This document shows, piece by piece, positions 26,701-61,318 of a stretch of DNA of 64,000 nt; position 1 is the first letter of the stretch, and every line of letters begins with the position of its first letter. The stretch lies in the IMG/VR virus record IMGVR_UViG_3300045999_008996, positions 124,001 through 188,000 of that record; one strand, written 5' to 3'. The position numbers and the translations under genes were made by a program. Under the pieces are notes generated by a model that ran no database searches, was not told where the DNA came from, and saw only the letters and a program-made list of their open reading frames with translations.

Positions 26701-26740
26701 ATTATAGACAAAAAAAAGAGGAGTGTCAAGCACTCCTCTA
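26701..26740 (-). promoter_or_regulatory. Combined terminator hairpin and consensus sigma70 promoter
   Basis: GAGGAGTG-CTTGAC-ACTCCTC-T8 contains TTGACA-17-TATAAT. Confidence 0.8.
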
Positions 26741-26746
26741 AATCAT

Positions 26747-26833
26747 TTACTTATTCAGCAATAGAATTTCCAAATAAATTAAAAAAATGAACGCTATCGA
26801 TGCTCCACATATAGCAGCAATCGTAGAGATCAT
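26747..26833 (-). CDS. Small hydrophobic protein (28 aa)
   Basis: MISTIAAICGASIAFIFLIYLEILLNK; coupled ATGA overlap. Confidence 0.5.
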   Translation of the reverse strand: MISTIAAICGASIAFIFLIYLEILLLNK

Positions 26834-26928
26834 TTTCCAGCACCTACGTTTACAAGTAGTGCTTGATAACGACGTTGTTCTTTTTGCTTTTGCTCTTTAA
26901 TGAGTTGAAGGACATTAAGTTTTTTCAT
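26830..26928 (-). CDS. Small protein (32 aa, MKKLNVLQLIKEQKQKEQRRYQA..)
   Basis: TGATG coupling to the DUF4278 gene. Confidence 0.55.
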   Translation of the reverse strand: MKKLNVLQLIKEQKQKEQRRYQALLVNVGAGK

Positions 26929-27065
26929 CACTTATGCCCCTCTTTTACGAACTTAACACCACGATAGGTTTCGTTGTATTGTTGAGGTTGTTGCATCATT
27001 TGTTGCTGATACTCAAGGCGTTTTTGAGTATCATATTCGATGCCACGATAAACTACTTTTGACAT
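26928..27065 (-). CDS. DUF4278-family small protein (45 aa)
   Basis: MSKVVYRGIEY..TYRGVKF: two YRG motifs; strong AAGGAG RBS. Confidence 0.8.
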   Translation of the reverse strand: MSKVVYRGIEYDTQKRLEYQQQMMQQPQQYNETYRGVKFVKEGHK

Positions 27066-27096
27066 TAGGGTTCTCCTTAGTTTTTTAGGTTAAAGA

Positions 27097-27192
27097 GCGT
27101 TCCTTCAGTCGGCGTTTGCGTTCGCTATTTACAAATAGCGAATGAACGATCCGTTCCGCGTCGGCTTACTTCCGTCTGTTTCCAGATGAACG
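27097..27192 (-). ncRNA. Tandem glnA-type glutamine riboswitch aptamers
   Basis: CGTTCA-[TCTG GAAA CAGA]-CGGAAGTAAG..GGAACG followed by CGTTCA-[TTCGCTATTT GTA AATAGCGAA]-CGC..GAAGGAACG; sigma70 promoter TTGTAT-17-TATAAT at 27200-27228. Confidence 0.75.
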
Positions 27193-27246
27193 TAAGGTCA
27201 TTATAGACCTGTTAGTATAGTTATACAAAAACTTTTGTAACTTTTG

Positions 27247-27573
27247 TTACCGTTCAATATAACTTAACGTATGGTTTTGGGCATATAATTGTTCTATGAT
27301 AATATCACACCCAATTTTTGGATTGCAGTCTCCGCATGTATAAACGTCCACTGCTGCCTTACCTTCCTCAGGCCATGTATGGATACTAATATGACTTTCA
27401 GATAGTAAACAAATTACAGTAACTCCCTGGGGTTCAAACTTTTTTGAAATAGTTTGTACTACAGTTGCTCCGCTTGCTGCTGCTGCGTTTTCCAATAAGT
27501 CTATAAGACAACGCTCGTCATCCAAAAGGACAAACGAGCATCCATACAAGTTAAGTAGATAATGCTTTCCCAT
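27247..27573 (-). CDS. speD: S-adenosylmethionine decarboxylase proenzyme
   Basis: F.PQGVT...LL.ESHISIHTWPE...AVDVYTCG (self-cleavage site ES). Confidence 0.95.
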   Translation of the reverse strand: MGKHYLLNLYGCSFVLLDDERCLIDLLENAAAASGATVVQTISKKFEPQGVTVICLLSESHISIHTWPEEGKAAVDVYTCGDCNPKIGCDIIIEQLYAQNHTLSYIER

Positions 27574-33570: not shown

Positions 33571-33670
33571 GAGTTCGGGGGAACGAACTGATACAATTAT
33601 GCTCTGCGACACCCTCCATCGCAGATATGAAGGACGGATTTTACTTGCCCATTAGTCCTGGTGGGGCAAG
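33571..33670 (-). ncRNA. Structured psbA leader of PhotoRC-II type
   Basis: TTGCCC..AGGACT..GGGCAA hairpin whose loop is complementary to downstream GTCCT (pseudoknot), then TCTGCGA..TCGCAGA and GTTCG..CGAAC hairpins. Confidence 0.6.
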
Positions 33671-33713
33671 GTGTTTATGAGATTTGTTTATAAAACTTAA
33701 CAAACCTCATTAC

Positions 33714-54447: not shown

Positions 54448-54454
54448 AAGTTAT

Positions 54455-54526
54455 TCAGGCTCGCCACCAATTCTTTGACTGGAAATTGGAAACCAGGCGG
54501 GAGAGAGTCCCATCCGCACCAGCAAG
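54455..54526 (-). ncRNA. wcaG-type structured RNA upstream of the epimerase
   Basis: GGTGCGGATGGGA-CTCTC-TCCCGCCTGG..CCAG..GGTGGCGAGCC; resembles the cyanophage wcaG motif (from memory) and sits in the expected context. Confidence 0.6.
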
Positions 54527-54531
54527 AATTT

Positions 54532-55095
54532 TTATTGTGCCTTATCTTGCGGGCACCAGGAAGACCATTTTTTAGATTTGCTATAAATTCTATTAGCAAC
54601 TTCCATTTTAGTCATATTATAGTGTTCCATAATAGATTGGATACCAACATACTCTTTACCATCAACTATAAAAATTTTTTTTGAGGGTTTAACAAAATTT
54701 AAAATTCTTTTATTTCTTTCTTCTTCAGAAAGAGAATCCCAATGCTTTTTTACAGAGTGTTTGATATTATCTTTATGTTCTTCAGTAATGACTTGTAAAG
54801 GTCTAACTTTTTTTAGTTTTTTGCTAATTTTTAGTTTATGTTCTTCACTTAATGGAGTTCTTCCTTTACTTCCACCACTTTTTCTGTTTAAAAGATTATC
54901 TAATATTGATATTAGATATTTTTCGTGTTTTAATGCATCCTCTTCAGAAAGGTTTTTCTTCAAAAATAATATTTTATCTTTGGTGGGTCTTGGAACATTA
55001 TGATTTTTATGAAATGCTCTACGACCAGTTCCCTTTCCTATGTAATATGGTGTTCCATTTTCACGAAGATATGCATATGTGTAATAGGTCTTCAT
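54532..55095 (-). CDS. GIY-YIG homing endonuclease with NUMOD3
   Basis: YYTYAY..YYIGKG..R..E..LI..N; LSEEHKLKISK. Confidence 0.85.
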   Translation of the reverse strand: MKTYYTYAYLRENGTPYYIGKGTGRRAFHKNHNVPRPTKDKILFLKKNLSEEDALKHEKYLISILDNLLNRKSGGSKGRTPLSEEHKLKISKKLKKVRPLQVITEEHKDNIKHSVKKHWDSLSEEERNKRILNFVKPSKKIFIVDGKEYVGIQSIMEHYNMTKMEVANRIYSKSKKWSSWCPQDKAQ

Positions 55096-61226: not shown

Positions 61227-61318
61227 AAGAGACCTCTCTGTTTGTGCTTCTATGAGAGGCATGAGAGGGGTGAGACTTATATGAGGTTTGGACCCTCACT
61301 GCTCATATGATTATTGTA

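What the first reader, a model, noticed from the sequence alone, without database searches (positions are those of the whole stretch)
26747..27230. Phage-encoded tandem glutamine riboswitch controlling a DUF4278 micro-operon
Seen: a sigma70 promoter, two consecutive CGTTCA..GGAACG aptamer-like units, then an AAGGAG RBS and three coupled small ORFs (45, 32 and 28 aa), the first with two YRG motifs. Known: glnA-class RNAs bind L-glutamine and in cyanobacteria precede gifB/DUF4278 genes tied to glutamine-synthetase control. Inference: the phage senses host nitrogen status and may modulate glutamine synthetase; the two downstream peptides are uncharacterised.
Basis: partly seen in the sequence, partly recalled or inferred. 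Interest (0 to 1): 0.6.

Follow-up and report, generated by a model that had tools for sequence, protein, structure and literature searches.

The report
Cyanophage nested double glutamine riboswitch operon
A T4-like cyanophage carries a known kind of glutamine-sensing RNA switch in front of three tiny conserved genes, and comparison with about 140 related phage copies suggests its two sensor units fold one inside the other rather than side by side.

Summary
On the minus strand lie a sigma-70-type promoter, two CGUUCA...GGAACG units, an AAGGAG Shine-Dalgarno and three overlapping ORFs (45, 32, 28 aa), ending in a terminator. The genome is a 222.6-kb T4-like cyanophage.

Rfam's Glutamine-I model passes its cut-off (36.5 vs 35 bits), but only when it aligns the whole 99-nt doublet as one aptamer with a 56-nt insert in the P3 loop. 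Each unit alone stays below it.

The class is already known. Glutamine riboswitches, doublets included, are described in cyanophages, and the S-CREM1 homologue is annotated. The ON-switch logic copies Synechocystis gifB.

Comparison with about 140 related doublets adds three points:
- A helix bridges the two units.
- The ligand-dependent "linchpin" pair joins unit 1 to the base after unit 2 in 144 of 144 loci.
- The two loop-E halves are split between the units.

I read this as a canonical Glutamine-I aptamer holding a circularly permuted second pocket at the tip of a shared P3.

ORF1 belongs to DUF4278 at family level. That domain is the IF17 moiety that does not bind glutamine synthetase, so GS control remains speculation. 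ORF2 and ORF3 are conserved real genes of unknown function.

The parts
27237..27250 (-). NtcA-box-like palindrome GTA-N8-TAC (GTAAC-N4-GTTAC). Its centre lies about 51 nt upstream of the first aptamer base.
   Evidence: Sequence. A GTA-N8-TAC lies within 120 nt upstream in 67 of 89 distinct related loci, against a background of 0.045 per 120 nt. Its centre is 51-53 nt from CGUUCA in 49 of them. NtcA binding and the sign of regulation are inferred.
27200..27228 (-). Sigma-70-type promoter: TTGTAT (27228-27223), 17 nt, TATAAT (27205-27200). Predicted start at about 27193/27192, the first aptamer base.
   Evidence: Sequence. The position is conserved in 77 of 89 relatives, mostly with TTGACT as -35. 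It was not listed by the scan because the -35 matches only 3 of 6. The start site is not mapped.
27188..27192 (-). CGUUC(1): 5' strand of the outer P1 (pocket helix). Pairs with 27102-27098.
   Evidence: RF01739 nested alignment; RNAalifold consensus. Invariant, so there is no covariation.
27175..27186 (-). Hairpin hp1 (UCUG-GAAA-CAGA) of the outer aptamer.
   Evidence: All 4 pairs show compensatory changes; 99.4% of cells are paired.
27167..27174 (-). CG, then G27172 (outer linchpin base x1), then AAGUA (5' half of loop E).
   Evidence: Matches the RF01739 consensus CGGAAGUA. x1 pairs with C27097: 40 of 40 Watson-Crick in alignment A1 (CG 24, GC 16), 89 of 89 and 55 of 55 in the two locus sets.
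27159..27166 (-). P3 5' arm (AGCCGACG). Pairs with 27114-27107.
   Evidence: Pair 42:89 of A1 is GC 13 / UA 9 / AU 5. Pair 35:97 is AU 32 / GU 4 / GC 3. A correlated 3-nt deletion occurs in both arms (AGUCG with CGACU).
27149..27158 (-). C, then GGAACG(1) (3' strand of the inner pocket helix), then G27151 (inner linchpin base y1), then AU cap.
   Evidence: Conservation of this part is partly forced by the search key. With an independent key, y1 is G in nearly all doublets and the cap varies (GAG, GAAT, GGTT and others; two loci carry a hairpin insertion here).
27143..27148 (-). CGUUCA(2): 5' strand of the inner pocket helix. Pairs with 27156-27152.
   Evidence: RNAalifold predicts this 5-bp hairpin. 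Invariant.
27121..27142 (-). Hairpin hp2, a 9-bp stem with a UGUA loop. Its sequence is a recurrent conserved module.
   Evidence: 4 of 5 tested pairs have compensatory changes. The same GCUAUU...AAUAGC hairpin recurs as hp2 in 20 of 45 short doublets and as hp1 in 12 of 44 insertion-type doublets, never in both.
27115..27120 (-). CG, then C27118 (inner linchpin base x2, pairs with G27151), then an AAA linker.
   Evidence: CGC is invariant in A1 although it was not part of the search key. x2:y1 is C:G in 40 of 40. One relative has the swap to G:C.
27107..27114 (-). P3 3' arm (CGCCGACU).
   Evidence: See the P3 5' arm entry.
27098..27106 (-). GAAG (3' half of loop E) overlapping GGAACG(2), the 3' strand of the outer P1.
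   Evidence: RF01739 nested alignment. Cyanobacterial singlets have the same AAGUA-P3-GAAGGAACGC layout.
27091..27097 (-). C27097 (outer linchpin base y2), which is also the first base of the anti-Shine-Dalgarno CUCUUUA.
   Evidence: The MFE fold pairs it with 27079-27073. The hairpin is -4.4 kcal/mol with C27097 and -1.5 without it. The layout matches C68 plus anti-RBS in Synechocystis gifB (PMC6212724) and CGCCUC with GAGGCG in singlets.
27073..27079 (-). Shine-Dalgarno UAAGGAG, 7 nt before the ATG.
   Evidence: Sequence; conserved in the clade.
26928..27065 (-). ORF1, 45 aa, a DUF4278-like peptide with two YRG motifs.
   Evidence: PF14105 at 19.3 bits (below the cut-off); 40 of 45 relatives hit it. 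phrog_5049 at E 1.6e-10. Found in 98 of 129 loci. 242 unnamed metagenomic protein clusters match.
26830..26928 (-). ORF2, 32 aa, a basic amphipathic helix. Its ATG overlaps the ORF1 stop (TGATG).
   Evidence: Found directly after ORF1 in 37 loci; 56-88% identity in the 24-sequence alignment A3. The motif occurs fused to the YRG peptide, or alone behind the riboswitch, in other loci.
26747..26833 (-). ORF3, 28 aa, a single hydrophobic (membrane-type) helix. Its ATG overlaps the ORF2 stop (ATGA).
   Evidence: Found directly after ORF2 in 11 loci at 44-71% identity.
26709..26739 (-). Intrinsic terminator (9-bp stem, T run). Its loop and tail carry the next promoter.

Best explanation
This is a translational ON switch for glutamine in the 127-nt leader of a phage early-type transcript.

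Transcription (inferred): host RNA polymerase starts at about 27193, at the first aptamer base. An NtcA-type box sits about 51 nt upstream.

Fold (from covariation): the leader forms one nested, two-pocket sensor rather than two beads on a string.
- The outer part is a complete Glutamine-I aptamer. P1 is 27192-27188 with 27102-27098. It has hairpin hp1 and a loop E made of AGUA and GAA. P3 is 27166-27159 with 27114-27107.
- In place of the P3 loop sits a second, circularly permuted pocket. GAACG 27156-27152 pairs with CGUUC 27148-27144, capped by GAU, with hairpin hp2 and a CGC strand. The same P3 helix serves this inner pocket.

Switching (by analogy with gifB): without glutamine, C27097 and the following UCUUUA pair with the Shine-Dalgarno at 27079-27073. 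Glutamine binding closes the outer pocket with the long-range pair G27172:C27097. That removes the closing C-G pair of an already marginal anti-SD hairpin and frees the ribosome site. ORF1 is then translated, and ORF2 and ORF3 follow through overlapping stop-start codons.

Role of the inner pocket (inferred): filling it should stiffen P3 and so tune the affinity or steepness of the response.

Products: a DUF4278 peptide, a basic helix and a membrane peptide, all of unknown function. The likeliest target is host nitrogen metabolism.

My sub-confidences: glutamine riboswitch controlling ORF1, 0.9. Nested fold, 0.7. ON switch through the anti-SD, 0.65. GS as the target, 0.2.
For: Class:
- RF01739 scores 36.5 bits (cut-off 35) for the whole doublet, with a 56-nt insert in the P3 loop.
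- The S-CREM1 homologue is annotated as a 99-nt glnA riboswitch at 44.0 bits (PMC9964418).

Nested fold:
- P3 bridges the two units, with compensatory changes at both ends and a correlated 3-nt deletion.
- The linchpin pair, defined in the solved Glutamine-II structure as C19:G41 (PMC6698751), is Watson-Crick between x1 and y2 in 40 of 40, 89 of 89 and 55 of 55 loci. The side-by-side pairings x1:y1 and x2:y2 hold in only 24 of 40, and both fail in the window (G.G and C.C).
- On a tree built from the sequence between the two bases, the state changes at least 9 times. All 6 independent pairs on supported branches switch both bases together (sign test p = 0.031).
- AGUA occurs only in unit 1 and GAAG only in unit 2, so loop E is complete only in the nested reading.
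- RNAalifold on its own predicts the nested topology.

Expression platform:
- The MFE fold sequesters the SD.
- The anti-SD hairpin is -4.4 kcal/mol with C27097 and -1.5 without it.
- The layout is the same in 12 cyanobacterial singlets and in the experimentally studied gifB ON switch (PMC6212724).

Operon: overlapping TGATG and ATGA, conserved ORF2 and ORF3, and a terminator.
Against: - No experiment exists on this RNA, and no RNA reads could be obtained.
- The P1 strands are invariant, so the choice between nested and side-by-side folds rests on the linchpins, loop E and P3 alone.
- About 60% of doublets (the C:G type) satisfy both models.
- Nearest-neighbour energies do not discriminate: -26.1 kcal/mol nested against -27.4 side by side. 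The unconstrained MFE (-33.1) uses other pairings.
- P3 holds two conserved C.A / A.C mismatches in the long form, including the window.
- The inner pocket needs a 2-nt bridge from G27151 to C27148 while G27151 pairs with C27118. I could not test this in 3D.
- Ruff et al. (PMC5066625) report that tandem glutamine RNAs showed no cooperative binding in vitro.
- My first locus set was fished with the junction 16-mer, which forces conservation there.
- ORF2 and ORF3 also have SD-like sequences of their own, so coupling is not proven.
Confidence: 0.6

Rival explanations
1. Conventional reading: two independent Glutamine aptamers side by side (P1 of unit 1 is 27192-27188 with 27156-27152; P1 of unit 2 is 27148-27144 with 27102-27098). 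They would act pseudo-cooperatively or redundantly on one ribosome site.
For: - This is how tandem glutamine riboswitches are described: 157 doublets and 4 triplets are classed as pseudo-cooperative (PMC9481103; also PMC2864571).
- Each unit alone gets a sub-threshold RF01739 hit (34.2 and 22.6-31.7 bits).
- The nearest-neighbour energy is slightly better (-27.4 against -26.1 kcal/mol).
- Doublets of the C:G type satisfy both linchpins in this fold too.
Against: - In the window and 36 other G:C-type loci both linchpins would be mismatches (G.G and C.C), while the swapped partners are Watson-Crick in 144 of 144.
- Neither unit would have a complete loop E.
- The covarying P3 would have to form as a pseudoknot between the units.
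- Neither unit alone reaches Rfam's cut-off, whereas the nested alignment does.
Confidence: 0.2
2. The RNA binds glutamine but lowers expression (an OFF switch), or acts mainly on mRNA stability or processing rather than on ribosome access.
For: - The direction of control is unknown for glutamine riboswitches upstream of glnA in metagenomes (PMC6212724).
- The ligand-dependent pair removes only one pair of the anti-SD hairpin.
- Expression platforms differ between doublet clades.
Against: - The layout 'linchpin C followed by anti-SD' is the same as in gifB, which is an ON switch by reporter assay (PMC6212724), and as in 12 cyanobacterial singlets.
- There is no terminator-like element between the aptamer and ORF1.
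Confidence: 0.1
3. The conserved leader is not ligand-responsive in the phage. It would be a relic copied from the host, or a protein-binding element.
For: - No binding data exist for any phage copy.
- The conserved hp2 sequence module could be a protein site.
Against: - All pocket nucleotides of both units are kept across about 140 diverged phage loci.
- Structure-preserving covariation is seen in hp1, hp2, P3 and the linchpin.
Confidence: 0.04

Closest known systems
Glutamine-I (glnA) riboswitch of Synechocystis gifB (Klahn et al. 2018, PMC6212724) and cyanobacterial singlets
   Same: - CGUUCA-hairpin-CGG-AAGUA-P3-GAAG-GAACG-C core.
- The linchpin C is followed by an anti-SD that pairs with the ribosome site.
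- A downstream ORF starting M..YRG (DUF4278 / IF17).
- An NtcA motif in the promoter region.

   Different: - The P3 loop is replaced by a second pocket.
- The gene product is a 45-aa DUF4278-only peptide without the IF7-like GS-binding C-terminus.
- Two further coupled peptides follow.
- The context is a phage, between speD and thyX.
Tandem glutamine riboswitches (Ames and Breaker 2011, as cited in PMC5066625; Weinberg 2010, PMC2864571; Sherlock 2022, PMC9481103)
   Same: Two aptamer sequences a few nucleotides apart in one leader, common in marine and phage sequence. This element is almost certainly one of that population.
   Different: The papers I could read treat them as consecutive units (pseudo-cooperative, no benefit identified). 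My counts favour a nested fold with a shared P3. The original 2011 paper was not available, so I cannot exclude that it noted this.
Annotated phage homologues: Synechococcus phage S-CREM1 glnA riboswitch (OP535465, PMC9964418); S-PM2 speD - p190 - p191 - p192 - td locus
   Same: - 87.5% identity over the riboswitch with S-CREM1.
- The same doublet.
- The same synteny (speD, doublet, small ORFs, thymidylate synthase) in S-PM2, S-SRM01, P-TIM68 and Bellamy.

   Different: - The downstream peptide sets differ: S-CREM1 has a single 48-aa fusion-type ORF.
- The window's genome is only about 77% identical to its nearest sequenced phage, over part of a 7-kb stretch around the locus.
Glutamine-II (Downstream-peptide) riboswitch with PMM1846-type DUF4278 genes of Prochlorococcus
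   Same: - The inner unit has the Glutamine-II type linchpin (C:G) and no loop E.
- Small DUF4278 proteins lie downstream.
- An NtcA motif is present (PMC6316151, PMC6698751).
   Different: - RF01704 does not hit (15.8 bits against 33).
- No P2 helix encloses GGAACG.
- The strand order is permuted.
Tandem glycine riboswitch
   Same: Two homologous aptamers for one amino acid with a single expression platform and inter-aptamer contacts.
   Different: Unrelated fold. The glycine aptamers are consecutive and dock by tertiary contacts, whereas here one unit is inserted into a helix of the other.

Membership tests
Glutamine-I riboswitch (Rfam RF01739, glnA RNA) | Covariance-model score at or above the gathering score (35 bits) | tested here: met
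   36.5 bits, E 4.7e-7, for 27192-27094 aligned as one aptamer with a 56-nt insert in P3. Not met by either unit alone (34.2 and 22.6-31.7 bits), and missed by the default whole-window scan.
Glutamine-I riboswitch (Rfam RF01739, glnA RNA) | P1 / pocket helix CGUUC with GAACG, plus a hairpin closed by A and CG | tested here: met
   Present twice. The hairpins covary.
Glutamine-I riboswitch (Rfam RF01739, glnA RNA) | Loop E (AGUA opposite GAA) flanking P3 in a three-way junction | tested here: met
   Met only in the nested reading: AAGUA at 27171-27167 and GAA at 27106-27104, flanking the covarying P3. In the side-by-side reading neither unit has both halves.
Glutamine-I riboswitch (Rfam RF01739, glnA RNA) | Long-range linchpin Watson-Crick pair closing the pocket | tested here: met
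   G27172:C27097. 144 of 144 related loci are Watson-Crick in two states, with at least 6 independent co-switches.
Glutamine-I riboswitch (Rfam RF01739, glnA RNA) | Selective binding of L-glutamine and ligand-dependent gene control | not testable with these tools
   Needs in-line probing or ITC, and reporter assays.
Glutamine-II riboswitch (Rfam RF01704, Downstream-peptide) | Covariance-model score at or above 33 bits, with a P2 helix enclosing GGAACGG | tested here: not met
   15.8 and 10.1 bits. There is no complementary strand after either GGAACG in the window.
DUF4278 (Pfam PF14105) | Profile score at or above 25.3 bits | tested here: not met
   ORF1 scores 19.3 bits, E 0.0015, covering profile positions 2-32 of 57. 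At family level, 40 of 45 phage relatives hit at E <= 0.01 (best 1.7e-7). Bacterial neighbours score 43-85 bits. I file ORF1 as a short, divergent DUF4278-like member.
DUF4278 (Pfam PF14105) | Repeated YRG-x-x-Y motifs, and location behind a glutamine riboswitch | tested here: met
   Y6 R7 G8 are invariant; Y11 and Y34 R35 G36 are conserved in at least 90%. Bacterial singlets precede M-K-L-T-YRG ORFs.
GS-inactivating factors IF7 / IF17 | IF7-like C-terminal region with the GS-binding basic residues | tested here: not met
   ORF1 has only 45 aa, all of it DUF4278-like. None of the three ORFs has any other Pfam hit. The ORF2 profile against an IF7-like profile built from 8 cyanobacterial proteins gives hhalign probability 13%, E 0.0021, over 21 columns, matching 2 of 5 invariant residues. 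That is a weak lead only.
Dual-aptamer riboswitch with one expression platform | Two ligand pockets, one platform, inter-aptamer structure | tested here: inconclusive
   The anatomy fits: both pocket nucleotide sets are present, P3 is shared, and there is a single anti-SD. Stoichiometry and cooperativity are not testable here. The literature reports no cooperativity in vitro (PMC5066625).

The most novel reading that the evidence does not exclude
The 'tandem' glutamine riboswitches of cyanophages, this one included, are single nested two-site sensors. A canonical Glutamine-I aptamer shares its P3 helix with a circularly permuted second glutamine pocket inserted at the P3 tip, and a single anti-SD platform serves both.

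This architecture may be undescribed. It would also explain why isolated units score below Rfam's cut-off.

A further, weaker extension: ORF1 (DUF4278) and ORF2 (basic helix) may together form a split miniature of IF17. They occur fused in some phages.
Probability: 0.4. Interest if true: 0.65.

Novelty: new member of a known kind. Interest (0 to 1): 0.45.

Why it matters
As first described, this is one more copy of a known phage riboswitch cassette. It confirms that T4-like cyanophages read host glutamine, and probably 2-oxoglutarate through NtcA, to time a small gene set placed among nucleotide-metabolism genes.

The wider value is structural. If the nested reading holds, it covers a large population of sequences: Sherlock et al. 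counted 157 doublets, and I found at least 200 viral contigs. Those would then be natural examples of an aptamer inserted into a helix of its own homologue, with a circular permutation. That is a design principle so far known mainly from engineered RNAs.

It would also give a testable reason for the doublet, whose benefit is stated as unknown in the literature I could read.

The three peptides are abundant, conserved and unnamed. They are cheap to synthesise and to test against glutamine synthetase.

Tried and rejected
- Whole-window Rfam scan at gathering thresholds: no glutamine hit. The hit appears only with permissive filters or a short input.
- Glutamine-II model: no hit.
- Genome contigs pattern scan with a 14-base gapped key: only chance matches in unrelated bacteria. 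The one cyanobacterial hit lay in unrelated sequence lacking the aptamer motifs.
- Own nested covariance model R1 on 151 sampled cyanobacterial genomes: only singlets of 58-90 nt, no doublet. This means 'not found in those searched', not absent.
- Complex prediction for ORF1 with ORF2: no verdict. This is not evidence either way.
- AlphaFold2 of ORF1 with 45 relatives: two beta-hairpins around a helix, mean pLDDT 69.8, pTM 0.29. This is too weak for a fold search, so none was run.
- PDB profile search: only chance hits to uS19 (E 0.59).
- ORF2 against IF7-like profile: probability 13%.
- Nearest-neighbour energies cannot separate the nested fold from the side-by-side fold.
- Ames and Breaker 2011 and Ren et al. 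2015 are not held in the library. Prior description of the nested fold therefore cannot be excluded.
- Plus-strand ORFs across the locus (37, 34 and 42 aa) were set aside. The minus-strand ORFs are the ones conserved as protein across loci.
- Only genetic code 11 was used.
Full report
CONTEXT. The window is bases 124001-188000 of a 222,563-bp IMG/VR virus record with direct terminal repeats. It carries 20 tRNA genes, a wcaG RNA, a PhotoRC-II RNA and an abiF-like RNA. Around the finding lie speD (27573-27247; AdoMet_dc, 121.7 bits) and a flavin-type thymidylate synthase gene (26536-25805), all on the minus strand. The nearest sequenced phages are Kyanoviridae, at about 77% identity over parts of a 7-kb stretch. 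So it is a T4-like cyanophage with no close cultured relative.

OBSERVATION. Read on the minus strand, the locus holds in order:
- TTGTAT, 17 nt, TATAAT (27228-27200).
- Seven bases later, CGUUCA (27192).
- Two CGUUCA...GGAACG units, joined by GAU.
- UAAGGAG (27079-27073) and ATG 27065.
- ORF1 (45 aa), ORF2 (32 aa from ATG 26928, overlap TGATG) and ORF3 (28 aa, overlap ATGA).
- A 9-bp terminator at 26739-26717.

The -35 is weak (3 of 6). Relatives carry TTGACT or TTGCAT at the same place in 77 of 89 distinct loci. The description is therefore correct, and only the terminator lies outside the given coordinates.

IS IT A GLUTAMINE RIBOSWITCH? The default scan of the whole window reported nothing here. 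With permissive filters, RF01739 gives 34.2 bits for unit 2 and 22.6 bits for unit 1 (31.7 in the whole-genome search), against a cut-off of 35. Given only the doublet, the same Rfam model returns one alignment across 27192-27094 at 36.5 bits (E 4.7e-7). In that alignment the first CGUUC pairs with the last GAACG, hp1 is followed by CGGAAGUA, a 56-nt insertion fills the P3 loop, and then comes GAAGGAACGC. The published S-CREM1 annotation is likewise a single 99-nt glnA hit at 44.0 bits (PMC9964418, Table 4). The Glutamine-II model does not hit (15.8 bits).

RELATIVES. blastn found the element in 15 phage records, among them S-CREM1, S-PM2, S-SRM01, DSL-LC02/03, P-TIM68, Bellamy and S-T4. Several share the synteny speD, doublet, small ORFs, thymidylate synthase. 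The junction 16-mer occurs in at least 120 IMG/VR stretches. An independent key (P3 3' arm, loop-E strand and P1 strand) also occurs in at least 120.

ARCHITECTURE. Listing the tails of both units showed three things.

1. The stretch after AAGUA in unit 1 and the stretch before GAAG in unit 2 are complementary and covary.
 - The innermost pair is G:C, U:A or A:U (27 of 27 Watson-Crick).
 - The outermost pair is A-U, G-C, C-G or G.U.
 - A 3-nt deletion in one arm always comes with a 3-nt deletion in the other (AGUCG with CGACU).
 - One locus has a wholly different but still complementary pair of arms.
 - Two positions are conserved C.A / A.C mismatches in the long form, and become Watson-Crick in other forms.

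2. The linchpin joins the two units.
 - In the solved Glutamine-II structure the pocket is closed by a long-range pair. It joins the base after the 'CG' that follows the hairpin to the base after GGAACG (C19:G41; PMC6698751). In the Glutamine-I consensus this pair is G:C.
 - In the doublets, the base after hp1 (x1) is complementary to the base after the second GGAACG (y2). This holds in 40 of 40 aligned sequences (CG 24, GC 16), 89 of 89 loci of the first set and 55 of 55 loci of the second set.
 - The base after hp2 (x2, C) matches the base after the first GGAACG (y1, G).
 - In the side-by-side reading, x1:y1 and x2:y2 pair in only 24 of 40. Both are mismatches in the window.
 - On a tree built only from the sequence between x1 and y2, the joint state changes at least 9 times. 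All 6 independent pairs on supported branches changed both bases together (p = 0.031). A tree of the downstream region gives 7 changes and 4 of 4 pairs.

3. Loop E is split. AGUA is present only in unit 1 and GAAG (or AAAG) only in unit 2. Loop E is a defining feature of Glutamine-I, and it is complete only if the two units form one aptamer.

RNAalifold, with no guidance, also returns the nested topology. Cyanobacterial singlets found with my model R1 show the plain form CGG-AAGUA-GGG...CCC-GAAG-GAACG-C. The phage element is that form with the P3 loop replaced.

The inserted part reads: C-GGAACG-G-AU-CGUUCA-hp2-CGC-AAA. It holds every pocket nucleotide again, in the order expected for a circular permutation whose ends lie in P3 and whose P1 is capped. 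P3 is thus shared by both pockets.

Caveats:
- The P1 strands never vary.
- Doublets of the C:G type fit both models.
- Nearest-neighbour energies are equal within error (-26.1 against -27.4 kcal/mol).
- The 2-nt bridge in the inner cap was not tested in 3D.
- In the papers I could read, tandem glutamine riboswitches are treated as consecutive units. They are called 'pseudo-cooperative' (PMC9481103) or of unknown benefit and non-cooperative in vitro (PMC5066625).
- The original paper by Ames and Breaker is not held.

EXPRESSION PLATFORM. C27097 is both the linchpin partner of G27172 and the first base of CUCUUUA, which pairs with UAAGGAG. The hairpin is worth -4.4 kcal/mol with C27097 and -1.5 without it. 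The same arrangement (linchpin C, then anti-RBS) is described for Synechocystis gifB, where glutamine raises expression (PMC6212724). It recurs as CGCCUC with GAGGCG in the 12 singlets I fetched. No terminator-like element lies between the aptamer and ORF1. I therefore take it as a translational ON switch. This is inferred, not shown.

UPSTREAM BOX. GTAAC-N4-GTTAC (27250-27237) fits the NtcA consensus GTA-N8-TAC used for marine cyanobacteria and cyanophages (PMC3037559). Such a box lies within 120 nt upstream in 67 of 89 distinct relatives, where about 4 would be expected. In 49 of them its centre is 51-53 nt before the aptamer. The window holds 17 such boxes, against 9.4 +/- 3.1 in shuffles. 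Host gifB and Prochlorococcus PMM1846 combine an NtcA motif, a glutamine riboswitch and DUF4278 in the same way (PMC6212724, PMC6316151). The position, at about -51 next to a full sigma-70 promoter, is neither the classic activating site (-41.5) nor an overlapping repressing one. I leave the sign of regulation open.

PROTEINS.
- ORF1 has invariant Y6 R7 G8, and Y34 R35 G36 conserved in at least 90%. It hits PF14105 below the cut-off (19.3 bits), whereas 40 of 45 relatives hit it at E <= 0.01. It also matches phrog_5049. 242 unnamed metagenomic clusters match it.
- DUF4278 is the N-terminal moiety of IF17. It promotes stability and is dispensable for GS inactivation. The GS contacts lie in the IF7-like C-terminus (PMC6316151).
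- Behind cyanobacterial singlets I found full IF17 proteins (143-150 aa), IF7-like peptides (49-56 aa) and DUF4278-only peptides.
- ORF2 is a conserved basic helix, found in 37 loci. Its motif is fused C-terminally to a single-YRG peptide in some phages, N-terminally in others, and in a few stands alone behind the riboswitch. ORF1 and ORF2 are therefore functionally linked. Its resemblance to the IF7 core is weak (hhalign probability 13%).
- ORF3 is a conserved hydrophobic 28-mer, found in 11 loci.

No function can be assigned. Action on host nitrogen assimilation is the best guess (about 0.2 for GS itself).

VERDICT. The finding is real and correctly classed, but it is a new member of a known kind. 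The part that may be new, and that applies to the whole population of phage doublets, is the nested two-pocket fold.

Noticed in passing
Related loci, e.g. L002:1538-1690, L005:1262-1429, L023, L074 (not in the window): In 44 of 89 related doublets, hairpin hp2 is replaced by a 150-230-nt insert holding a conserved 50-60-aa ORF.
- Its AUG sits in the 5' arm of the stem (CGUUCAUCUAUGG).
- Its stop is usually the UGA or UAA of the loop-E strand.
- Its C-terminus (..C.(I/W)DAKAD) is encoded by conserved aptamer nucleotides.
It is a gene inside a riboswitch helix, so translating it and folding the aptamer should exclude each other.
   Followed up: partly
window 27121-27142 (-) and relatives: The hp2 sequence itself (UUCGCUAUU-loop-AAUAGCGAA) recurs nearly unchanged. 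It is hp2 in 20 of 45 short doublets and hp1 in 12 of 44 insertion-type doublets, and never both. This may be a tertiary-contact or protein-binding module needed once per doublet.
   Followed up: partly
window 26701-26739 (-): The terminator of the micro-operon carries, in its loop and tail, a perfect 12 of 12 sigma-70 promoter (TTGACA, 17 nt, TATAAT). It serves the next gene (ATG 26678, a 57-aa acidic protein, phrog_878), which is conserved in 84 of 129 loci upstream of thyX.
   Followed up: partly
L294 and L327 (IMG/VR loci): The 3-nt cap between GGAACG(1) and CGUUC(2) is replaced by a stem-loop of about 40 nt. One other doublet has the inner linchpin swapped to G:C, with a CAUUAU linker.
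   Followed up: no
window 54453-54558 (-), 33589-33682 (-), 61232-61268 (-): wcaG RNA (83.1 bits), PhotoRC-II RNA (60 bits) and an abiF-like RNA (41.3 bits) are present. The last lies next to a cluster of 16 tRNA genes at 59.4-61.2 kb; the window holds 20 in all.
   Followed up: no
window, 17 sites (e.g. 4456, 39911, 50711): GTA-N8-TAC boxes occur 17 times, against 9.4 +/- 3.1 in shuffles (1 of 100 shuffles reaches 17). This is in line with reports of multiple NtcA sites in T4-like cyanophages (PMC3037559).
   Followed up: no
Protein clusters P0001-P0005 and others: Many public gene calls for ORF1 homologues are 62-78 aa long and share 89-98% identity with the 45-aa ORF1 over its whole length. 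The extra 17-33 residues probably come from calling an upstream start inside the riboswitch, which I did not verify.
   Followed up: no
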